This document shows, one piece after another, positions 2,830 to 53,959 of a DNA stretch of 64,000 nucleotides (its first letter is position 1; the number at the start of each line of letters is the position of its first letter). The stretch covers positions 1-64,000 of the forward strand of contig NW_026782031.1 of assembly GCF_031769215.1 (NCBI RefSeq), written 5' to 3'. The notes beneath the pieces were generated by a model. That model was not told where the DNA came from and searched no databases. It saw nothing but the letters and a program-made list of their open reading frames with translations. The translations under genes were made by a program, and so were the position numbers. The stretch comes from Ylistrum balloti (lineage: Eukaryota).

Positions 2830-3229
2830 CTAAAGTACCAATAGTTGGCACTGGATACAAAGTGGAAACAGCACCATGTGCTTCTCTTAAAACTGGTGAC
2901 CGAATTTCCTCCGCCAGTAGAGATAGTCCCGGGTAGGCTCTTTTGTCAACACCACGGATAAGTCGAGTCTGTAGTTGAACAATGCTATTGTCTTTGCTCT
3001 CTTTGACCATCGCCATCCTGTACATTACATATAGTGATTTTGATAATTTGATTACGTATATAATGCACTGGTACCTATAAGCTGTACTGCATTTGGATAT
3101 ACTAAAACTTGAAACGTGTTCGCTCTGCGAAATTAGCTATGTCTCTCTTCCGAGACCCGGAGAGCTACCACAAGGATCTCCTTTTGACTTGACATGGTAG
3201 ATTTCTGCAGTGAAGACACCATAAAGGAC
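2830..3229 (-). pseudogene. Decayed copy of the last coding exon of the novel gene family
   Basis: Acceptor (tttgtttag) at 3230-3231, then PLWCLHCRNLPCQVKRRSLW* and, after an insertion of roughly 120 bp, LFNYRLDLSVVLTKEPTRDYLYWRRKFGHQF*EKHMVLFPLCIQ. Clearly homologous to 4751-5043 but with premature TAG (3165-3167) and TAA (2887-2889). I found no recognisable exons 1-3 next to it. Confidence 0.85.
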
Positions 3230-4750
3230 CTAAACAAAGAATGTATATTTCATTCCATTTTTAAAGTTCAAGGGTTCCACTATTTATCTGATTAGCAACA
3301 ACGTCGAAAAATCAACCTTGATTTTGAAGAGTAGAAATACCTTATCAAAATTTAAAGCCGGTATTTGTTGATTAATACGCTTAGCTGCCATTTTTCACTT
3401 TTTTATCCAATCGTTATAAACCTACAAAGCAAACGTAAAAGTACTCCAAAGATAGCACATAATATCACTAAAATCTGGTACCTGTAACTGAGCGAGATCG
3501 GTGTTTCTCAGTCAACGGATGAGATGCTGTAACATAATCCCAATCGAGGCTTTACCCGTTGTTAGAATGTTACAAGATCTTTTTCCTCCGTTTCACAAAA
3601 CAGTCTTTAAAAAATTTCAGCAGAGACAAACTTTTTCAATATTATAATTTTTATTGCAATATTTAATGCAAAATAAAGAATGGTTACATAGACATCAATT
3701 TTTTAAACAGTAAGCAAATATTAATCAAACATGACAATGACGCCTAAAGTTTATTACTTATGTGACTAACTATTGCTTTAAATATTTTCAATATAAACAA
3801 TCTGTACAAACATTCATATGGCTGTTTTTGTTATTTTGCAAGGTTGGTGAAAACATAGTTTATACAAATAAATTGAGCCAAATTATACCAATTTACGATT
3901 ACGAGGATTAAACTTATTGCTATAACAGATACATTGATTTATTAATGATTTTTTTCTTAGGACCATGATCAGACAAATATATAAAGAATTGGAACAGAGT
4001 GATATATACAAGCGTAGTCATAATATATGGAACCATAGGCAGTGGTGGTCAGTGTTCGTACTGACCACTACGACAAACATAATTCTAGGTGAAAAGTGAA
4101 TTTCAAATTATCTTGGGACGGAAGTAAAAGACACGATAACGACAACATTTCTCACTAAGGTCACGTAATAGGGAAGAATTAAATCCGGGGCATTAGCCAT
4201 GATAAACCTGTACAGGATTTTTACACAAAGCTTAGCAACATTGACAAACTTAAAAATCAAAAGTTGTACATAGATATATTGTTCCGATGTATCTGGCCGC
4301 AATGCTATTACAAATAAAAACATACAAGGCACACTGAATGGAACATCACATAAACTGATGACGTCAATCCAACATCTCTCTTTTCCATCATTTGACTACC
4401 CTCATCATTCTTATTAGAGGACAGGATATGAATCTGAAATATAAACAAACCTTTGTTGAATTTATTTTTTCCGTGTAAGTTGTTGGCTTACTTTAAAACA
4501 AATCTGTCGACAACTATGACCTGTTTAAGCCAAATGCTTTTGTCAATTTAATCGAAAATCTAAAACTGTGCATAGAGAATGTTACTCTGCAGTGTCTACT
4601 CATCAGAAATAAGTTAACATTGAATGCATTTTATTCCTTTATCTGGTCCAGCCACTGACAGAAATGATCATACTAAGGAGAAGAATGTTTAACTCCTTAT
4701 GAATAACTGCCAAAAGGGAGAGAAGTATTTTAAAACTATACAGTGCCTAC

Positions 4751-5713
4751 CTAGCGAGGAACTGGGTACCAATAGTTGATCTGGCGCTGGATACAAAGAG
4801 GAAACAGAACCATGTGCTTCTCTTCAAACTGGTGACAAAATTTCCTCCGCCAGTAGAGGTCATCCCGGGGCAGCTCCTTGGTCAACACCACGGATAACTC
4901 GAGTCCATAGTTGAACAATTTCATTGCTTTTGCCCGCTCGGCAAAATTAGCTTTGTCCCTCTTTCGAGATCCGGAGGGCTTCCACAAAGATCTTCGTTTG
5001 ACCTGACAGGGTACAGTTCCGCAGTGAGGACAGCGTGAAGGACCTAGACAAGAACATGACGTGTACATCACGATAGAGGAAATAGGATGTAAAGTAAATA
5101 TAACAAAAAGAGGACGGAATCTCATCAGACAATATTACTTACGAGTCCTCCATTCATGGATCATCGACATCATGGTTGAGTATCCCTTTCTGACACGTCT
5201 CCCAACGGCTGGAGCGTTCCTTAACAGCAGGCTTACAAGGGCACAGAGCAGAGTACACAACACCTCATTGCCAATTCGCTGAAATGTATGAAACAGGCAT
5301 TAAATCTACTTTTCGAATATAAATAGTGATTGTTACAGACAATAGATAGACTGAAAACGTCAGAGATAAAGAAGATCGTACCCTTACCATTGCAACATCG
5401 ACAGACGTTGGACAAACTTTCTCGAATTCCGATGCGGTTAGATAGTGGTAAAATCTTTGGACATATCCTGGCTCGGGCTCCACGCTAAATGGAAAAAGAA
5501 ATTAAAAGATGAAATATTTCTTTAAAAAATGTATTAACGCACAATAGTATTGGTCTTTTACTTAGAATATCGTGCATTCCATCAATATATTCACGGTAGA
5601 TATATCATTAAAATTTTTTTCTAAACTTACCATACAAGGCCCTGATATATACCGGGACCTTGATGCATGACGCTCAGCATTACCACAAATAGCAGGAATA
5701 ACCTTATATCCAT
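4751..5713 (-). CDS. Novel 4-exon, 202-aa predicted membrane or secretory-pathway protein, copy A
   Basis: Exons 5713-5631, 5484-5388, 5278-5143, 5043-4751; all introns GT-AG and phases 2/0/1 join without frameshift. Translation: MDIRLFLLFVVMLSVMHQGPGIYQGLVC-VEPEPGYVQRFYHYLTASEFEKVCPTSVDVAM-RIGNEVLCTLLCALVSLLLRNAPAVGRRVRKGYSTMMSMIHEWRT-RPSRCPHCGTVPCQVKRRSLW...KHMVLFPLCIQRQINYWYPVPR*. Exon lengths (83/97/136/293) are identical in copy B. Confidence 0.85.
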
Positions 5714-5811
5714 TGTGGTAAGCCAAAGGTTTACAATAAAAAGTAAAATTCAGGGGAGAGACTCATCATCTCCGCCTTTACCGATTGCTAAGCAGCGTAG
5801 CAACTAGAGTA

Positions 5812-5844
5812 TGACGTCACAAATGGCTTCTAATCATGACGTCA
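5812..5844. promoter_or_regulatory. Pair of perfect CRE palindromes (TGACGTCA) upstream of copy A
   Basis: TGACGTCA at 5812-5819 and 5837-5844, about 100-130 bp upstream of the ATG; the pair recurs upstream of copy B. Function is inferred. Confidence 0.5.
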
Positions 5845-8399
5845 TGCAATTGTCTGTGCATATATGTTGGGTAAACTATTATCGATGACGCTATGAATGT
5901 TACTCTGTTGAACCAAGAAGTATAATTGGGATCCCCGAATCATCTTACATTCTATTCAGCAATATCTATGGTTCCTGTTAATCTTGGCCTAATATTTCTT
6001 AGTCATATTTAGACTGAATGGAACAGTTAATCAAATGTATAAATATTGACGTAATTATGTCACATGTAACAAAAGCTCATCAAAACAACAGAAGATAGAG
6101 AAAGAGAAGTAATCTTTTTCAACTTTGTAAACAAGAAGACCTGAAGTAAGTATCTATATATAACTGTATATCACTGGGGTCCTGTGACACATAATCAGTA
6201 ATCGGGATGAAACATTTTAAAGAAATAAACATATATAAAACTTCACGCTGGGAAACGAGTTTTGGTACATGACTTGTGTATTCATTTGTGTTAGACGAAT
6301 GAAACATTTTAAGAGAGAGAGAAAAAAGGAAATATGTGTATGTTAAATATCCCAGGTGAGCTTTTAACTCTAGAGTCGTAACCGATCACCTCGTCACAGT
6401 CCGCCAATACTTTCATTTTGCAATTACCTAGCCTTGTCATTGATGCGAGTCTCGTTCGTATGGGTTATATTACACATTTTTTCAACTCTGTGAACTGAAA
6501 ATACCTCTGACCAGCAAACATTTGTTGCCCAATCAATGTTCTACAATGACGCGAGTCTCTCATCGCCGCCATTTTGTAACCGCGAGCCAGGAAGCAGACG
6601 ACGCTTGAACTTGATTTCGGGACTAAAACCATACTTTCCTAAAATTGTGTTTTGGCACTAAAGATAAATGTATTTGATTGTAAAACAAATGAAGAAGTTT
6701 CGCAATATTGACTCTTTCAAACGTTGAATCGTCACAGACAACCTAACGAATATGGAAACGAAAGAAAGTAGCCGATACGAATGTTTAAATAGCGTATGTC
6801 CACGGTTGGTCAGATCGTCTAATTAAGTCACGATGTATTCAGATCAGTTGTAGTCAAGTCCCTACTGCCATGAGTAGAGATGAGTCGAACTTGATCAAAG
6901 TCAATATTACCAGAATATACCATAAATCGTTTTAAATATATATTGTCATTATTTCTGTGTCTCTGTCGCAGGATGTTCCTAGATGAGTAAATGGTGTAAG
7001 TACACAAATATACCGGTACCCTCAGTACAGTAAAAAGCCTTGTGGGACTGGTTCACACGGACATTGAAAACGGCGTGGTAGGATAGATGATGATATTAAT
7101 CACTTTACCATCACAAGCAATTTTAAAATGTCGTTATTTTGTACATACAAATACAGACTACAGTACAGCTAACAGGTTATAAGGATTTTCTTGGGTTTTT
7201 TTTATAAATGATTACCTGGGATAGACACGGTGACATTTTGAATACTGAGATTGCATATGAATACTTATTAACGATTAGCTTGTAATGAAAATAACAAATA
7301 TTATAAACGTTTGATACGGGACAGAAATGCTATTTGCTATTGTTGTGTTATCCCTAGTAGGTGCTAAATGAAATCTGGACCGATTAGACAATAAAAATGG
7401 TTGTCATGGCGGCCGCTTTGGGAAAAAAATCGTTTCTTTTTAAGGGTTAGTCGGATGGGGACTAAATTCGAACCCGTACGACATCAAAATGGACGCTATA
7501 GACACTATATTGAAAATCTTGCTATCATACTCCTCTTGGAGAGAAGGTCAAATGAGACTTTAGCTTAAAACCTCGAGGTAAAGTCTAACGAAATCAGATC
7601 AAAACCAATCTCATAATTTTAAGCAGTAACAGAACACCAGTTCTGTCACAAACTCCAGGTAAAGTCAATAAAATATAGATACGCCAGAAATACAAGGATG
7701 AGGACATACATGTGTGATGAAAACACAAGTTTGAATCTATTCATACAATACGCCACTGTACGAATAAGACGTGTCCTTGTAAAGGTCCCATGAAAGTTAT
7801 TTGATTCATAATCTGTTTGAAAAATACTTTTACATGGAAGTAAAATTTGACAATTCAAATTACATTTCGGTCCAAAAATCTGTTAAGACTTAGTTTCGAG
7901 TTTAGGCAATGCATTCTCAGAAAGAAGTCAAAAGGTCTTAGTTTATATGTTGTATTTTATGTTCTATATCGGCAATATTTGTTTTTCCGGTGAGAATTTG
8001 CCCGGAATGTCACGTACGAGTAAAAATGAATGTCTGCGAACTATTGGAATCGTAGAATATCACAGAACAAAGTGTCAAGACAGTTTGAGTTGTATATAAT
8101 ACGACAAATGCTTTGTGGAGACGTGGTAGGTACCGCCCACAAACAGGCGTCCGAGTGTGACGTCACGTCAGAAAGATACGTATTTACTGATGACGTATTT
8201 CAACAATCGGTTTCAATCCTCTTCATAGAATCATTATAGGACTTAGATATGTCAGTTCCAGAACCGTTCAAAACAGACTGCGATATGTCAACATCCGTTT
8301 AGAGTTCAGTTTTGCTTCAATGTCAAATAGTTGCTCTCTAAGTATGGTTTAGATGATACCCCCGATTCACTAAAAGGGACTGGTCTAAATAGCTATTCA

Positions 8400-8790
8400 C
8401 AGTTTCACCTTGATAGCAGTAACGGTGTTGCTTGGGTGTATTGTCGGTCGGGAGAACATAACAGTGATAAACTTGTAATATAGCGGTGTCAGTTCGACAG
8501 AGGAAGCACTACGATTTGGGAGTATTACAACGCATGGAAGCTCCGTGACGAAATTATACGTCATTACATCATTTTTTGTATAGCTGTAATATTTACAGTA
8601 TAAATAGTTTTGCAAAAGGACTACGCACGACCTCATACTGCACGTGTTGTTAGGGCAAATTAACAGCGGCAGAACATCGCCGTGCTGTGTCACCAGATTT
8701 GTCTCCAATCAAGCATGTTCGGAATGAAATGGAGCGGCATCTGCATCAGGAGCCAAACCCTCCTGCAACATTTGAATTGACCAAGACAAA
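8400..8790 (+). mobile_element. Degenerate Tc1/mariner transposase fragment
   Basis: Interrupted frames read FHLDSSNGVAWVYCRSGEH...FDRGSTTIW, QKDYARPHTARVV and SPDLSPIKHVRNEMERHLHQEPNPPAT, matching the Tc1 DDE motifs (QDNARPH, SPDLSPIEHVW). Stops and frameshifts are present. Confidence 0.85.
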
Positions 8791-9164
8791 ATTCAATGCA
8801 GATATTTCAGTTAAGACAGTTTGTTTATAATGTTTTGATCAAGTTCAAATGTTTAAAATTTTTTAACGTTTTTTAACAAAGAAAGAATGGCTGAAAAATA
8901 GCCGTTGTTAAATTCGTTATTTTTCCGCAAAGTAGCATTTGAGTGTCACGGTAAAAGTCCATTTGTTACATGGACTACAACATATAACAAAGACTCGCAT
9001 TCCTATGATTGCAGTATTCGGCTTTGGTATGGGACACGCCGTATTCCCAATATGTAACAACACACCAGTCTTGAAAACGGCCCCGGGGTCAAACAGACCG
9101 GAAATATTGTCTTTCCAAAGTAGGTCAAAAGAGAGTTCAGTGACCTACTTCTGAATGCGGTCAA

Positions 9165-10050
9165 TAGAGTACCGAACACTGACCAATGTAAATACGGTCT
9201 GTAGAGTACCGAACACTGACCAATGTAAATCCGTTCTATAGAGTACCGAACACTGACCAATGTAAATCCGGTCTTTAGAGTACCGAACACAGACCAATGT
9301 AAATACGGTCTATACCGAACACTGACCAATGTAAATCCGTTCTATAGAGTACCGAACACTGACCAGTGTAAATACGGTCTATACCGAACACTGACCAATG
9401 TAAATCCGTTCTATAGAGTACCGAACACTGACCAATGTAAATCCGGTCTTTAGAGAACCGAACACTGACCAATGTAAATCCGGTCTTGAGAGAACCGAAC
9501 ACTGACCAATGTAAATCCGTTCTATAGAGTACCGAACACTGACCAATGTAAATCCGGTCTTTAGAGAACCGAACACTGACCAATGTAAATCCGGTCTTGA
9601 GAGAACCGAACACTGACCAATGTAAATCCGGTCTTGAGAGAACCGAACACTGACCAATGTAAATCCGTTCTATAGAGTACCGAACACTGACCAATGTAAA
9701 TCCGGTCAATAGAGTACCGAACACTGACCAATGTAAATCCGGTCTTTAGAGAACCGAACACTGACCAATGTAAATCCGGTCTATAGAGTACCGAACACTG
9801 ACCAATGTAAATCCGGTCTTTAGAGAACCGAACACTGACCTATGTTAATACGGTCTATAATGAACACTGACCAATGTAAATCCGGTCTTTAGAGAACCGA
9901 ACACTGACCAATGTGAATCCGTTCTATAGAGTACCGAACACTGACCAATGTAAATCCGGTCTTTAGAGTACCGAACACTGACCTATGTTAATACGGTCTA
10001 TACCGAACATTGACTAATGTAAATCCGGTCTTTAGAGAACCGAACTGACC
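9165..10050. repeat. 37-bp minisatellite, about 24 copies, with shorter variants
   Basis: Unit gagaaccgaacactgaccaatgtaaatccggtcttta; the ORF-track translations repeat every 37 aa (3 units). Confidence 0.95.
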
Positions 10051-10944
10051 ACTTCAACAAATTTTAATTGAGGAAAGAAATGTAAACTATTTTCGGCGAT
10101 CAAGACCGGATAAAAAAGCCATCCCGTGCGGAGATCGACCATTCGATGTACAAACTAAGAACATAAAACATCACAAGCATAAAATTGATAGATACTCTTA
10201 CAGACATGACATCACAACGATCAAGATTATTCCGGTTGTATATTTTCAAAACAAAATTACAAATTAAAACAAGGCACGGCAAACGGAATATCACAAAAAC
10301 TGATTTTGTCAACCCAAGATCATCCTCTTCCATCATTCGACCACCCTCAACATCCTTCTCTGCTCTGAGACTTGAAATGAATCTGCAGCATAAAAAACTT
10401 TATTGAATTTATTTTAACAATGTATTTTGAACAGCATCATGAGTACTAGCTTACTTGTATCGATCCGTCAACATGTAAACGATGTCTACTTCATAATACA
10501 GTTATTTAGAATATTCTGTGTTGTATTTCTAAATTTATAACAACTGACTACATGTTATGTACGTGTTTGCTGCACGATCCTTCCTGTGTAGTAATATAAA
10601 CACGATCAGAATTGATTTTGATTATAGTGATATATGAAAGATATTCATTAATACCACATTAAATGTTCTTGTCCGCCTCAAACGTATTTAGATGTCATTA
10701 TTATGTTCCTTAAATGACGTCCGTACTGACGATTCAGAATCTTCAACAACCAATACATTGACACAATAATAAGGATATATGACGAGGAAAGGGGGAGGAG
10801 GAATACAGTGCCTACCTAGCATTTTATTCCTTTATCTGGTCCAGCCACTGACAGAAATGATCATACTCAGGAGAAGAATATTCAACTTCTAATGACAAAC
10901 TGCCAAAAGGGAGAGAGGTATTTTAAATACAATACAGTGCCTAC

Positions 10945-11963
10945 CTAGCGAGGAACTGGGTACCAATAGTTGATCTGGCGCTGGATACAAAGAGGAAACA
11001 GAACCATGTGCTTCTCTTCAAACTGGTGACAAAATTTCCTCCGCCAGTAGAGGTCATCCTGGGGCAGCTCCTTGGTCAACACCACGGATAACTCGAGTCC
11101 ATAGTTGAACAATTTCATTGCTTTTGCCCGCTCGGCAAAATTAGCTTTGTCCCTCTTTCGAGATCCGGAGGGCTTCCACAAAGATCTTCGTTTGACCTGA
11201 CAGGGTACGGTTCCGCAATGAGGACAGCGTGAACGACCTAGACAAGAACATGACGGGTACATCACGATAGAGGAAATAGGATGTAAAGTAAATATAACAA
11301 AAAGAGGACGGAAACTCATCAGACAATATTACTTACGAGTCCTCCATTCGTGGATCATCGACATCATGGTTGAGTATCCCTTTCTGACACGTCTCCCAAT
11401 GGCTGGAGCGTTCCTTAACAGCAGGCTTACAAGGGCACAGAGGAGAGTACACAACATCTCATTGCCAATTTGCTGATATGAAAGAAGAAATACATATTTT
11501 TTGACCGAGAAAACAGTTTTCAATGTGGAAAGCGGCCGATGATTTAAAACTTGATACAATTAGACCAAGTTAGAAATAAAGTATAATTTAGTACGGAGTC
11601 CCATATGATTTTTACCTTTTTGATATCGGCAGGTGTTGGACAAACTTTCTCTAATTCCGATGCGGTAAAATGGTAGTAAAATCTTTGGAGATATCCTGGC
11701 TCCGGTTCCACGCTTAATGGAAAGAAAATGAAAGTGAACGATGAAGTAATTCTTGATTTGTAAAAAAATATTCTTTTGTTAATACAAAACTCCAAAAGAT
11801 ATTGACATTTTCTGAGAATATCGCGCGTGCCGACAAAATAGTCGCAGTTGCAAAGTATAAAGAAAACTTGCTAAACTTACCATACAAGGCCCTGATATAC
11901 ACCGGGACCTTGTTGCATTACGCTCAGCATTACCACAAATAGCAGGAATAACCTTATATCCAT
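10945..11963 (-). CDS. Novel 4-exon, 202-aa predicted membrane or secretory-pathway protein, copy B
   Basis: Exons 11963-11881, 11712-11616, 11472-11337, 11237-10945; GT-AG introns, same exon lengths and phases as copy A, open throughout. Exon 2 reads VEPEPGYLQRFYYHFTASELEKVCPTPADIKK. Confidence 0.85.
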
Positions 11964-12061
11964 TGTGGTAAGCCAAAGGTTTACAATAAAAAGTAAAATT
12001 CAGGGGAGAGACTCATCATCTCCGCCTTTACCGATTGCTAAGCAGCTTAGCAACTAGAATA

Positions 12062-12104
12062 TGACGTCACAAATGGACCAATGTAATAAACCATGATGAC
12101 GTCA
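12062..12104. promoter_or_regulatory. Pair of perfect CRE palindromes (TGACGTCA) upstream of copy B
   Basis: TGACGTCA at 12062-12069 and 12097-12104; the spacer differs from copy A but both sites are intact. Confidence 0.5.
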
Positions 12105-12474
12105 TATTTTTTTTCTGTGTCGCACAATAGACAGCTAACATGACAAGTGTGTTTCTCCTTCTCTCTTTTTTCTTTGTTCTTTGATGAAGACGGGGAACTG
12201 TTTCGGGAAGTCTCCCCGCTCGCACCCGACACAGACCTGGTCATTTGGTGGGTCTATTTCAATAGCAAAGACATATTTAGGAGTATTGTTGAAGACTTCT
12301 CAAAAAACGATAATGTTTCCGTTTTCATTGGTATTTTAATATTCTAAAGCTGTAATGGTAATGGATCATACTAAAACCCGTGTTAGCAATACCTGACCTT
12401 GCAGACATCCTGAAATATACCGAAAAATTGTCATAAATGACCCAACGAGCAAGGCTCTGAATGTAGATATGATC

Positions 12475-12530
12475 TGTCTATCTGTCTGTCTGTCTGTCTA
12501 TCTGTCTGACTATTTTTTTTTTTTTTTTAC
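12475..12530. repeat. (TCTG/TCTA)n microsatellite followed by poly-T
   Basis: tctgtctatctgtctgtctgtctgtctatctgtctg then a T run. Confidence 0.85.
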
Positions 12531-13507
12531 TTTAACGGCACTCTTTTAATCGGGATTGATCCTGGATGTCGATAAAACCCTGTTTCAATATCGGCCAAGT
12601 ATTTCTCGAGAGGAAAATGCTGTCATTTGTTAAACACTTGATACTGGTGCTATCACTTAATCGCTATGGCATTCCCTGTGATAACGGTGTCTGTATGACA
12701 ATTAAACACCGTCAGTCACAGAAATAGCGACTCATTCAGATATCGGTTAGATGGCCGTACAGCGAATCGATCTGTAATTTAGTAGGCTACACCTGTCAAC
12801 AATACAAACAGGTGCTAACATCAGATAATTTTATATCTTAGTGTCAGACATCGTCATACAGATACAAATTAGTTCAAATTATGGCTGTCAACTCAACATG
12901 TTCTACGATGGTTTGGATGCCTTGGTATCGGAAAAAACATTGCGTGGCTGTTAAAATCATACAGAAGGATAAAATCAAATTGTGTTGAATAGGATGTCTT
13001 TGCGTCAATGTATTTGATGCAAACAGGAATCAAATCACCGTGTTGTAATCTTTACATAAAAATAACACACCGATTGTTTGAATATTTTGAGGTTGGAAAC
13101 ATTCGTACAAACAGGAAAATCAACACAGGCCTACCAACATTAACATGATTATATAAAGCTCCATTTCTTTTTTGATTGCCATCCTTGTAGTGACTAACAT
13201 GGGATAGCTTTAATGTTCAACAACTGTTTACACCGGATGTGACCTTTCGTCATGGAATAAGGTCACAGGTCGGAGGACTGAAATCTGGATGCCAACGGGT
13301 CAACTTTAAGACAACATTTATGTTTTGGTTGTCAGCTTCATATTGGATAATATTGTCGACATAGATTGGGTGTATTAATATTATCTATTTCCGGTACAGT
13401 AAACACTCCAATACGGGGTTGTGAATAATATAGTTCATACGTTCGAGGGTCGCATACTGCAATACTGACTCAAACCAACAATCGTTAGCATTAAAGTATT
13501 GTATATT

Positions 13508-14584
13508 ATGATGGCTGCTCATAAAACAGACATGGTTTGGTTAGAAATAATTGATGCTAATCCTGTTGAGAAGGTTCCAATCGCATGCGTGTGTGCTGAA
13601 GGACTGAACGGAACTATAACTTTCATCGATGAAAATGCCCAGGACATTCCTCGAGCAGATGACCAGTGCTTTCCTTTTCCAGAAAATGTCCACGAACAAA
13701 TAAAACAGATCGTTCTTATTCCAATTACAATCCTGATTCTCGGATGTAATTCAGGAGTTTTGTGTCTAATTGCGACAAACAAAATCTTCCGTACTCCAGC
13801 CTACCTTCTCATTGCAAACCTTGGCCTTGCCGATCTGACAGTCGGTGTCGTAAGCATCGGCACCATGCTTACTCAAGCTAAAGAGGAAACTCTCGACCTG
13901 TGTTTAGTTCGGATAGGATTCACAGTGGCATGTTGTGTTTCTTCGATTATCTGTCTGATGTGTATCGCCATAGAACGGTATATCGCCATCACGTATTCGC
14001 TGACGTACAGACAAACTGTTACGGCTTGCAAGGTAACTGTAGTGGTTCTCCTTTCATGGCTTGTATCGCTCGTGGTTGGATTCGCCCCTTTGATAGGATG
14101 GAAGATAGAATCATATCACTACTATTGTTCCTTTCTTTACGTCCTTCCATCTGACTACATAATATTTTTGTTTTCTTCCTGTGTTTTCCTACCAATAGTT
14201 GTAACTTTTACAATGTATGCAGTGATCTATAAGTATGCCAGACGGCACATCAAGAGAATTGAAGCCATAGAAAATCTTAACTTAGACAGAAGAAATAATA
14301 GAATTTTCAGATTTTCTCCAAGAAATTTGAGATCTCTGAAAACCTTGCTGGCAGTTTTTGGTTGTGTCATTGTCACGTGGCTGCCGTTTTTGATTGGAAC
14401 GATCACCCAGGTCATATATGGTTATACTACCTGTTTCTTAAAGGACATTGTAGGAACGCATCTTCTGTTATTGGGGTTCACAAACTCGTTCCTGAATCCA
14501 TTGATATACGCGCTGGGAACCAAGGACTTTAGAGACAAAGTCAGAGAAACGTTTGGGCGTCGCGTCAGTTTTAACTCTCCGTAA
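13508..14584 (+). CDS. Class A (rhodopsin-like) GPCR, single coding exon
   Basis: Seven hydrophobic segments with class A motifs: TM1 GCN, TM2 NLGLADL, Cys at the top of TM3, IAIERYIAI (ERY), TM4 SW, ECL2 Cys, TM5 FLP, TM6 TWLP, TM7 NSFLNPLIY. The first ATG is at 13508; the track start at 13499 is TTG. Subfamily not assignable by eye. Confidence 0.95.
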   Translation: MMAAHKTDMVWLEIIDANPVEKVPIACVCAEGLNGTITFIDENAQDIPRADDQCFPFPENVHEQIKQIVLIPITILILGCNSGVLCLIATNKIFRTPAYLLIANLGLADLTVGVVSIGTMLTQAKEETLDLCLVRIGFTVACCVSSIICLMCIAIERYIAITYSLTYRQTVTACKVTVVVLLSWLVSLVVGFAPLIGWKIESYHYYCSFLYVLPSDYIIFLFSSCVFLPIVVTFTMYAVIYKYARRHIKRIEAIENLNLDRRNNRIFRFSPRNLRSLKTLLAVFGCVIVTWLPFLIGTITQVIYGYTTCFLKDIVGTHLLLLGFTNSFLNPLIYALGTKDFRDKVRETFGRRVSFNSP

Positions 14585-53815: not shown

Positions 53816-53959
53816 NNNNNNNNNNNNNNNNNNNNNNNNNNNNNNNNNNNNNNNNNNNNNNNNNNNNNNNNNNNNNNNNNNNNNNNNNNNNNNNNNNNNN
53901 NNNNNNNNNNNNNNNNNNNNNNNNNNNNNNNNNNNNNNNNNNNNNNNNNNNNNNNNNNN
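53816..53959. other. Assembly gap (144 N)
   Basis: Run of n characters. Confidence 1.

What the first reader, a model, noticed from the sequence alone, without database searches (positions are those of the whole stretch)
5279..11880. Patchwork identity between paralogs: only exon 2 and its flanking introns have diverged
Seen: amino-acid differences A vs B are 2/27 (exon 1), 10/32 (exon 2), 3/45 (exon 3) and 2/97 (exon 4). Intron 3 (99 nt) differs at only 2 positions and about 110 bp of 5' flank is nearly identical, yet introns 1 and 2 differ in length (146 vs 168; 109 vs 143 nt) and barely align. A single duplication would not leave one intron 98% identical and its neighbour unalignable. Inference: gene conversion keeps the promoter/leader and membrane/tail blocks uniform while the presumed extracellular exon escapes, a variable-outside/constant-inside pattern like that of allorecognition and immune receptor clusters.
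Basis: partly seen in the sequence, partly recalled or inferred. Interest (0 to 1): 0.8.

Follow-up and report, generated by a model that had tools for sequence, protein, structure and literature searches.

The report
Gene-conversion mosaic in scallop gene pair
Two neighbouring copies of an uncharacterised scallop membrane-protein gene look patchy because short stretches have repeatedly been copied from one copy into another (gene conversion), and exon 2 is simply the old part that was not overwritten; this is a clear but ordinary example of a well-known process.

Summary
Genes A and B lie on the minus strand, have 4 exons and encode 202 aa. They are 96-99% identical over the promoter with exon 1 and over exon 3 to the 3'UTR. 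They are 84% identical in exon 2 and 53-70% identical in introns 1 and 2.

The genome is the saucer scallop Ylistrum balloti, and both models equal RefSeq "uncharacterized" proteins. The genes are not an isolated pair. The family has at least 30 copies here and was found only in scallops. A second copy of the whole A+B unit lies on contig C120.

Comparing the four genes shows gene conversion directly:
- Intron 2 and the flanks group A with A' and B with B'.
- Exon 4 groups A with B, which share 4-5 derived letters found in no other copy.
- AU tests reject the opposite groupings.
- B carries an A-type 3'UTR inserted at a 17-nt duplication, a junction footprint.

The immune-receptor reading is not supported. 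Exon 2 has dN/dS of 0.3-0.6 and no variation in four resequenced samples. It is identical in another tandem pair. It shares at most 17 identical bases in a row between A and B, so it can escape passively.

The scan has already reported regional conversion in other gene families of this genome.

The parts
4751..5713 (-). Gene A (RefSeq LOC132546691, 202 aa). Exons 5713-5631, 5484-5388, 5278-5143 and 5043-4751 (stop included).
   Evidence: The spliced translation is identical to P0020 / XP_060066392.1.
10945..11963 (-). Gene B (RefSeq LOC132546690, 202 aa). Exons 11963-11881, 11712-11616, 11472-11337 and 11237-10945.
   Evidence: Identical to P0055 / XP_060066391.1.
5621..5826 (-). 5' homogenised tract in A (partner in B: 11871-12076). 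It covers 113 nt of proximal promoter, exon 1 (signal peptide) and the first ~10 nt of intron 1, with 5 mismatches in about 205 nt. It is nearly the same in all four genes A, B, A', B'.
   Evidence: Contigs of other samples switch to B's upstream sequence exactly at 5826 (loose ends).
5284..5620 (-). Old, unconverted central block in A (partner in B: 11478-11870): intron 1, exon 2 and intron 2.
   Evidence: Exon 2 is 84% identical and the introns 53-70%, with indels. The block tree groups A with A' and L029 at 100/100, and an A+B clade is rejected at p-AU 2e-6. The longest exact A/B match is 17 bp.
5015..5283 (-). Tract alike in all four genes (partner in B: 11209-11477): last nt of intron 2, exon 3, intron 3 and the first ~30 nt of exon 4. 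A and B differ at 10 of about 270 positions.
   Evidence: Intron 3 shows 0-3 differences among the four genes, although the two units differ by 7-16% in neutral DNA.
4738..5014 (-). Most recent A/B conversion tract, inside exon 4 (partner in B: 10932-11208). There is 1 mismatch in 277 nt, against about 7% difference to A' and B'.
   Evidence: Site pattern AB|A'B' is 9:0:0. A and B share letters at 4964, 4949, 4943, 4808 and 4838 that are unique or nearly unique among 18 copies. The (A,B) clade has 100/98 support, (A,A') is rejected at 5e-5 and (B,B') at 5e-3.
4626..4737 (-). A-type 3'UTR, up to the AATAAA signal (copy in B: 10819-10931). A and B differ at 9 of 112 positions, whereas B and B' are about 100% identical. 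This is the older copying event.
10803..10948 (-). Junction footprint in B. A 17-nt direct repeat (10803-10819 and 10932-10948, the second overlapping the stop codon) brackets the 129-nt A-type 3'UTR. B's native post-stop sequence starts only after the distal repeat.
   Evidence: B's distal sequence is 77% identical to the immediate post-stop sequence of L004. B's proximal 129 nt are 91% identical to A and 44% identical to L004, which is the level of a shuffled control. B' has the same structure.
2835..3224 (-). Broken third copy: exon 4 fragments with stop codons, downstream of A.
   Evidence: C174:2842-3009 and 3108-3224, each with a stop codon inside.

Best explanation
A and B are old head-to-tail paralogs, 6.2 kb apart, of a scallop-only family. 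The family encodes 202-aa proteins with a predicted signal peptide, an ectodomain of about 43 aa with two Cys, one membrane segment, and a conserved Cys/His-rich C-terminal part of about 97 aa. The patchwork comes from repeated non-allelic gene conversion, meaning repair copied from a paralog, in tracts of about 200-700 bp.

At least three events can be told apart:
1. An older copy of an A-type 3' end into the B-type gene, with a non-homologous end marked by a 17-nt duplication. It happened before the whole A+B unit was duplicated to contig C120.
2. Homogenisation of promoter with exon 1, and of exon 3 with intron 3, among all four genes of the two units.
3. A recent tract of about 277 nt inside exon 4, between A and B only.

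Exon 2 and its introns are the remnant that keeps the original divergence. They most likely escape passively. The introns are full of indels, and exon 2 offers no identical run longer than 17 bp for strand invasion or heteroduplex extension.

Shown: the mosaic, the incongruent histories, the shared derived letters and the footprint. Inferred: the repair mechanism, the order of events and the passive escape.
For: - Gene models are exact and equal to RefSeq proteins.
- C120:929027-937515 is collinear with window 4748-12076 at 84-91% identity and with unrelated flanks. It is therefore a second copy of the unit, not a haplotig.
- Informative sites: intron 2 gives AA'|BB' 32:0:0, the distal 5' flank 34:3:3 and the distal 3' flank 36:6:6, while exon 4 gives AB|A'B' 9:0:0 (Fisher p = 3e-9).
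- ML trees and AU tests by block are incongruent.
- Exon 4 dS is 0.033 for A-B against 0.19-0.30 for the other pairs. Exon 4 dS is not intrinsically low, with a median of 0.47 within the subfamily.
- A and B share 4-5 derived letters absent from the other 16 copies, so the identity is not a consensus artefact.
- A run of 46 consecutive concordant polymorphic sites gives a pairwise permutation p <= 0.0005.
- B and B' have a chimeric 3' end with the 17-nt duplication.
- Independent data: contigs of four other samples hold A-specific intron 1, exon 2 and intron 2 with 0-2 differences, at the same depth as the single-copy flanks. They bridge the exon 3/intron 2, exon 2/intron 1 and 3'-flank/exon 4 junctions. 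They switch to B's flanks exactly at 4626 and 5826. One contig over 4888-4994 carries the A/B-specific letters.
- Mosaic identity recurs in other pairs of the family.
- Passive escape: the longest exact match in the centre is 17 bp, exon 2 dN/dS is below 1, and exon 2 is 100% identical in the C433 tandem pair.
Against: - No read or contig spans a whole conserved tract of about 650 bp, so the linkage of A's unique centre to A's exon 4 rests on the assembly plus short bridges.
- Three letters private to A inside the tracts (5663, 5669, 5206) were not seen in any of the four other samples, which show the B-like letter there. They may be rare alleles or assembly errors.
- Near-identity of exon 3 with intron 3 among genes on two different contigs requires exchange between loci whose physical distance is unknown.
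- Passive escape is an argument from sufficiency. Selection against conversion of exon 2 is not excluded, and two 8-codon windows (codons 49-56 and 89-96) have pN/pS above 1, on very few sites.
- Expression and function were not tested, because no RNA run was found.
Confidence: 0.85

Rival explanations
1. Conversion homogenises promoter with leader and membrane with tail, while selection for diversity keeps conversion out of the extracellular exon 2, as in allorecognition or immune receptor clusters.
For: - Exon 2 lies in the predicted ectodomain (hydropathy), and exons 1-3 have higher dN/dS (0.3-0.5) than exon 4 (0.07-0.19).
- The same exon 2 island is seen in the pair L007/L008.
- One 8-codon window at the end of exon 2 has pN/pS 1.65 within the subfamily.
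- The family is large and lineage-restricted.
Against: - Exon 2 dN/dS is below 1 in every comparison.
- There is no variation in A's exon 2 in four other samples.
- Exon 2 is identical in the C433 tandem pair and 96-99% identical among dispersed subfamily-2 copies.
- The ectodomain is not the most variable part across genera.
- The ectodomain has an invariant framework.
- No recognised immune-type domain was found.
Confidence: 0.1
2. Assembly or polishing artefact. The near-identical blocks were produced by collapsing or consensus polishing of multi-copy sequence, or A and B are two haplotypes laid in tandem.
For: - The pair lies only 4.6-12 kb from the start of its 161-kb contig.
- Exon 4 k-mers are present at 10-30 times single-copy depth.
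- A-private letters at 5663, 5669 and 5206 are not found in other samples.
Against: - A and B share derived letters that are unique in the family, so the tract is not a family consensus.
- The same A-then-B arrangement exists a second time on C120.
- A-specific segments sit at the same depth as single-copy flanks in four samples, not at half depth. The homology boundaries 4626 and 5826, and a B-type and an A-type letter at 4737 at about equal depth, are reproduced in those samples.
- RefSeq annotates both genes.
Confidence: 0.04
3. No conversion. One old duplication was followed by strong purifying selection on exons 1, 3 and 4 and on a functional element in intron 3.
For: Exon 4 is under strong constraint (dN/dS about 0.1) and is conserved across four genera.
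Against: - Synonymous sites, intron 3 and the 3'UTR are homogenised too.
- Intron 3 is only about 70% identical, and of different length, in the other subfamily members.
- No Rfam match was found.
- Selection cannot produce the AB|A'B' against AA'|BB' conflict or the AU rejections.
Confidence: 0.01

Closest known systems
Conversion between the human fetal globin genes HBG1/HBG2, and other tandem duplicates such as RHD/RHCE or the red/green opsins (from general knowledge, not tested here)
   Same: These are head-to-tail paralogs a few kb apart. Sharply bounded tracts that include introns are nearly identical, while neighbouring parts keep the old divergence. Paralogs within a cluster are more alike than positional orthologs.
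   Different: Here the gene is an uncharacterised scallop-only family with at least 30 copies. At least three tracts of different age overlap. Exchange also involves a second copy of the unit on another contig. One tract end is a non-homologous junction with a 17-nt duplication.
Conversion-shaped receptor clusters with variable ectodomains (MHC, KIR/Ly49, invertebrate allorecognition loci; from general knowledge)
   Same: It is a clustered, lineage-specific family of single-pass membrane proteins in which the cytoplasmic exon is the most uniform part.
   Different: There is no dN/dS above 1 and no polymorphism in exon 2 in four samples. The ectodomain is about 43 aa with an invariant framework and no Ig, LRR or lectin domain detected.
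Regional gene conversion reported by this scan in other gene families of the same genome (nicotinic-receptor pore segments, a GNAT acyltransferase cluster, a cdc25 palindrome)
   Same: The same organism and the same process. In the acyltransferase case the apparent 'hypervariable cassette' was likewise read as the old stretch that escaped overwriting.
   Different: A different gene family and different DNA. Those notes were not re-checked here.
P2X7 C-terminal 'ballast' domain (Pfam PF20478, P2RX7_C)
   Same: A short C-terminal motif with the same spacing (P-x-C-x4-I-x3-[FY]-P), a CxxCG-type Cys cluster at the start of the tail, and a predicted cytoplasmic position after a membrane segment.
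   Different: The Pfam model finds 54 places in this genome but none of the family's loci. It gives no hit on the exon 4 peptide or on relatives at E <= 1. Profile-profile alignment covers only 16 columns, with probability 0.3%. The tail is half the length of the ballast domain.

Membership tests
Non-allelic gene conversion / concerted evolution between paralogs | Abrupt change of identity that includes neutral sites (introns, synonymous sites, UTR) | tested here: met
   Intron 3 differs at 2/99 positions against 95/253 for introns 1+2 (p = 5e-14). Exon 4 dS is 0.033 against 0.29 for exon 2.
Non-allelic gene conversion / concerted evolution between paralogs | Different blocks of the same genes support conflicting trees | tested here: met
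   Site patterns are 32:0:0 against 0:9:0. AU tests give 2e-6, 5e-5 and 5e-3.
Non-allelic gene conversion / concerted evolution between paralogs | Derived substitutions shared only by the converted partners | tested here: met
   Letters at 4964, 4949, 4943 and 4808 are unique to A and B among 18 copies, and 4838 nearly so.
Non-allelic gene conversion / concerted evolution between paralogs | Mosaic confirmed on single molecules that span the tracts | not testable with these tools
   Only short-read contigs were available. They bridge the junctions but not the whole 650-bp tract.
Diversifying-selection recognition receptors (allorecognition / immune type) | dN/dS above 1 in the exposed variable part | tested here: not met
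   Exon 2 omega is 0.13-0.57. Only two 8-codon windows exceed 1, on very few sites, and one of them is cytoplasmic.
Diversifying-selection recognition receptors (allorecognition / immune type) | High allelic polymorphism of the variable exon | tested here: inconclusive
   There are no differences in A's exon 2 in contigs of four samples. However, contigs drop rare variants and the sample is small.
Diversifying-selection recognition receptors (allorecognition / immune type) | Recognisable binding domain (Ig, LRR, lectin and so on) in the ectodomain | tested here: not met
   No Pfam hit. The only similarity is a weak LRRCT-like match to GPIb-beta, E = 0.93.
P2RX7_C (PF20478) domain | Match to the family profile above its cut-off | tested here: not met
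   Searches give no match at the family's loci. hhalign probability is 0.3% over 16 columns.
P2RX7_C (PF20478) domain | Ballast-like fold | tested here: inconclusive
   The AlphaFold2 model is of low confidence (pLDDT 62.7, pTM 0.29). Foldseek against the PDB gives nothing below E = 5.

The most novel reading that the evidence does not exclude
The family could be a scallop-specific recognition or signalling receptor system. Ectopic conversion would keep one signalling tail (exon 4) uniform across dozens of dispersed genes within a species, while the ectodomain, membrane and juxtamembrane modules are kept distinct. That would be a modular 'constant tail, variable head' design maintained by recombination rather than by descent.

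Hints in this direction:
- Between the two subfamilies, exon 4 dS (0.62) is about a third of exon 2-3 dS (about 1.7).
- In the exon 4 protein tree all Ylistrum copies form one clade (99/95). In the exon 1-3 tree they split, with other genera in between, although the AU test does not reject one clade (p = 0.20).
Probability: 0.07. Interest if true: 0.6.

Novelty: new member of a known kind. Interest (0 to 1): 0.25.

Why it matters
This is a clean, well-controlled example of short-tract gene conversion in a mollusc. A second copy of the two-gene unit serves as an internal control, and a junction footprint gives the direction of one event. It shows that apparent 'young' paralogs and 'hypervariable' exons in this genome can be products of overwriting. 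That matters for dating duplications and for calling fast-evolving exons in bivalve gene families. It also flags an uncharacterised Pectinidae-only family of small single-pass membrane proteins with a very conserved Cys/His-rich tail. It does not reveal a new mechanism.

Tried and rejected
- Pfam on the exon peptides and on four scallop relatives gave nothing above noise.
- P2RX7_C idea from another note: the Pfam model over the whole genome hit 54 places but none in this family. Local hhalign of the tail alignment against ten P2RX7_C segments of this genome gave only a 16-column motif, probability 0.3%.
- A profile of 28 family proteins against PDB sequences gave only GPIb-beta at E = 0.93.
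- The AlphaFold2 model from the 28-sequence alignment has pLDDT 62.7. Foldseek against the PDB found no match. The ESM Atlas gave no usable hit.
- Full HMM scan of 1.84 billion representatives: 15 hits.
- Rfam over 4000-12500 found nothing, so there is no known RNA to explain the conserved intron 3.
- My 'global' permutation p-value was uninformative, because one almost identical pair (L007/L016) dominates it. Only the pairwise values are used.
- No RNA run holds the stretch, so expression and the possible 3'UTR intron stay untested.
- AU test of one Ylistrum clade on exons 1-3: not rejected (p = 0.20). Family-wide homogenisation of exon 4 therefore stays a hint.
- Transposon-borne gene: considered and rejected. 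Similarity between copies ends at about -113 and at the stop codon or 3'UTR, without terminal repeats, and all copies keep four exons with canonical splice sites.
- Haplotig: considered and rejected. The flanks of the C120 copy do not match the window.
Full report
**1. What is there**

The stretch holds two head-to-tail genes on the minus strand. I rebuilt them from the sequence.
- Gene A has exons 5713-5631, 5484-5388, 5278-5143 and 5043-4751.
- Gene B has exons 11963-11881, 11712-11616, 11472-11337 and 11237-10945.
- All splice sites are GT..AG. Introns are 146/109/99 nt in A and 168/143/99 nt in B. Each gene encodes 202 aa.

- Amino-acid differences are 2/27, 10/32, 3/45 and 2/97.
- Intron 3 differs at 2 of 99 positions.
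- The 113 nt before the ATG differ at 2 positions.
- Introns 1 and 2 align poorly, at 53-70% identity with many gaps.

The contrast is far beyond chance in neutral classes.
- Intron 3 against introns 1+2 gives Fisher p = 5e-14.
- Synonymous differences in exon 4 against exon 2 give p = 0.01.

**2.

The exon 4 peptide, searched by reference in the window's own genome, finds 48 matches. About 30 of them are intact, lie on many contigs and often form tandem pairs. I could build 20 complete four-exon models; 18 are intact at 202 aa and two (L027, L029) are broken.

Word searches with the exon 4 peptide and with a database relative found only "uncharacterized" proteins. They come from Pecten maximus, Mizuhopecten yessoensis, Argopecten irradians and Ylistrum balloti.

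A local comparison shows that my four spliced models equal RefSeq proteins of Ylistrum balloti:
- A = XP_060066392.1
- B = XP_060066391.1
- the two genes on contig C120 = XP_060064044.1 and XP_060064045.1

The genome is therefore the saucer scallop, and the models agree with an independent annotation.

An HMM of 28 family members against 1.84 billion representatives finds only 15 proteins.

Procedure note:
- The spliced model was searched exon by exon, by reference.
- No typed joined sequence was sent to any search tool.
- Whole-protein work used the database entry P0020, which is identical to A.
- Joined coding sequences were built only inside local scripts, for dN/dS and for comparison with fetched proteins.
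- The N run at 53816-53959 was left alone.

**3. The decisive control**

C120:929027-937515 is collinear with window 4748-12076, covering gene, intergenic DNA and gene, at 84-91% identity. The flanks of the two regions are unrelated. The whole A+B unit therefore exists twice. I call the C120 genes A' and B'.

Without conversion, every block should group A with A' and B with B'. Informative sites give:

| Block | AB\|A'B' | AA'\|BB' | AB'\|BA' |
|---|---|---|---|
| Intron 2 | 0 | 32 | 0 |
| Distal 5' flank | 3 | 34 | 3 |
| Distal 3' flank | 6 | 36 | 6 |
| Exon 4 | 9 | 0 | 0 |

The contrast between exon 4 and intron 2 gives Fisher p = 3e-9.

ML trees with AU tests agree.
- In the central block A groups with A' and L029 at 100/100, and an A+B clade is rejected (p = 2e-6).
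- In exon 4 A+B has 100/98 support. A+A' is rejected at 5e-5 and B+B' at 5e-3.

Exon 4 dS is 0.033 for A-B but 0.19-0.30 for the other five pairs. Exon 4 is not intrinsically slow at silent sites, since the median dS within the subfamily is 0.47.

A and B share letters at 4964, 4949, 4943 and 4808 that no other of 16 copies has, and 4838 nearly so. The identity is therefore not a family consensus produced by polishing.

A run test on polymorphic sites gives 46 consecutive concordant sites for A-B, with pairwise p <= 0.0005.

**4. Anatomy of the mosaic**

- **5826-5621.** Promoter, exon 1 and the intron 1 donor, with 5 mismatches. It is alike in all four genes.
- **5620-5284.** The old centre.
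- **5283-5015.** Exon 3, intron 3 and the start of exon 4, with 10 mismatches in 270 nt. It is alike in all four genes, although the two units differ by 7-16% in neutral DNA.
- **5014-4738.** The rest of exon 4, with 1 mismatch in 277 nt. Only A and B are alike here.
- **4737-4626.** The 3'UTR, with 9 mismatches in 112 nt between A and B, while B and B' are the same.

At least three events of different age are therefore superimposed, and some exchange has occurred between the two units.

B and B' also carry a footprint.
- Their native post-stop sequence starts 129 nt after the stop. It is 77% identical to what directly follows the stop codon in L004.
- It is preceded by an A-type 3'UTR that is 91% identical to A and 44% identical to L004, the level of a shuffled control.
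- The insert is bracketed by a 17-nt direct repeat that includes the stop codon, at window 10803-10819 and 10932-10948.

I read this as copying from an A-type template that ran past the end of homology and was rejoined non-homologously. It happened before the unit was duplicated. This gives the direction of that event as A-type into B-type.

**5. Is it an assembly artefact?**

Five public runs hold the stretch, and I laid the contigs of four of them on it; they come from four samples under two organism labels.
- A-specific intron 1, exon 2 and intron 2 are present with 0-2 differences. Their depth equals that of the single-copy flanks, not half of it.
- Contigs bridge the exon 3/intron 2, exon 2/intron 1 and 3'-flank/exon 4 junctions.
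- Contigs run off into B's own flanks exactly at 4626 and 5826.
- At 4737 the A and B letters occur at about equal depth.
- One contig over 4888-4994 carries the A/B-specific letters.

Limits:
- No contig spans a whole 650-bp tract.
- Three letters private to A inside the tracts (5663, 5669, 5206) were not seen in any sample.
- Depth figures for contigs are crude.

I rate an artefact at about 4%.

**6. Why exon 2 is different**

- Exon 2 dN/dS is 0.28-0.57 among the four genes and 0.13-0.51 across the family.
- Its dS between A and B (0.29) equals the ordinary old divergence seen in unconverted exon 4 pairs.
- A's exon 2 shows no difference in four samples.
- The C433 tandem pair has an identical exon 2, and its introns are 91-94% identical.
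- Across four genera, mean identity is 63% in the ectodomain, 57% in the membrane segment, 45% in the juxtamembrane part and 76% in the tail.
- Sliding windows exceed pN/pS of 1 only in codons 49-56 and 89-96, on a handful of sites.

The central block also offers no exact A/B match longer than 17 bp, and its introns are full of indels. From general knowledge of homologous recombination, this is too little homology to start or extend a heteroduplex. Passive escape is therefore sufficient. Selection is not excluded.

**7. What the protein is**

Hydropathy shows a signal-like N-terminus (residues 1-19) and one membrane segment (about 62-85) followed by basic residues. The layout is therefore:
- a leader;
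- an ectodomain of about 43 aa with two conserved Cys and an invariant CVEPEPGY motif;
- a membrane segment;
- a C-terminal part of 97 aa with CxHCGTxPC and a conserved C-terminal motif.

No family could be assigned.
- Pfam gave nothing.
- The P2X7 ballast idea from another note rests on a 16-residue motif only.
- The fold model is of low confidence and finds nothing.
- A weak LRRCT-like similarity of the ectodomain to GPIb-beta (E = 0.93) is a lead only.

**8. Wider pattern**

Mosaic identity recurs in other pairs. L007/L008 show the same exon 2 island, and L010/L019 have exon 1 at 100% identity next to intron 1 at 72%.

Between the two Ylistrum subfamilies, dS is about 1.7 in exons 2-3 but 0.62 in exon 4. 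The exon 4 protein tree unites all Ylistrum copies (99/95). The exon 1-3 tree splits them, but not significantly (AU p = 0.20). Family-wide homogenisation of the tail exon is therefore a hint, not a result.

The scan has already reported regional gene conversion in several other gene families of this genome. I did not re-check those notes.

**9. Verdict**

Gene conversion is supported at about 0.85-0.9. The immune-receptor analogy is not supported. This is a new, well-documented instance of a known process in an unstudied scallop-only gene family, and its interest is low to moderate.

Noticed in passing
window 4287-4467 (A) and 10256-10415 (B), minus strand: A block about 300 nt downstream of the stop codon is conserved at 70-81% across most subfamily members. 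It contains a TGACGTCA palindrome and is preceded by an acceptor-like TTTCAG. The stop codon itself is followed by a donor-like GTAGG in nearly all copies. This may be a 3'UTR intron plus a non-coding fifth exon.
   Followed up: partly
window 5812-5819 and 5837-5844 (A); 12062-12069 and 12097-12104 (B): Two CRE-like TGACGTCA palindromes lie about 100-135 nt upstream of each ATG. The distal one lies beyond the end of A/B similarity yet is present in both genes, which suggests a functional promoter element.
   Followed up: no
window 9154-10045: A 37-bp minisatellite of 24.6 copies (87% matches) lies between genes A and B. The collinear alignment with the C120 copy of the unit has a gap over this part.
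   Followed up: partly
window 2835-3224, minus strand: A broken third copy of the family (exon 4 fragments with stop codons) lies downstream of A. The local cluster therefore once had at least three members.
   Followed up: partly
window 13499-14584, plus strand: An intronless 361-aa open frame that looks like a rhodopsin-type seven-helix receptor lies next to gene B. It is unrelated to the finding.
   Followed up: no
protein residues 21-55 (exon 1 end to exon 2; window about 5653-5403): The ectodomain resembles the C-terminal half of an LRR C-terminal cap as in platelet GPIb-beta (shared YRDL-CV-P start and a second Cys at similar spacing). The match is not significant (E = 0.93).
   Followed up: partly
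window 5663, 5669 (exon 1) and 5206 (exon 3): Letters private to gene A in the assembly are replaced by the B-like letter in all contigs of four other samples. They could be rare alleles, polymorphic conversion or assembly errors.
   Followed up: partly
window 5043-5125, minus strand: The last 82 nt of intron 3 are open in frame with exon 4 and start with ATG, giving a 124-aa ORF in both A and B. This is probably trivial given the near-identity of the intron.
   Followed up: no
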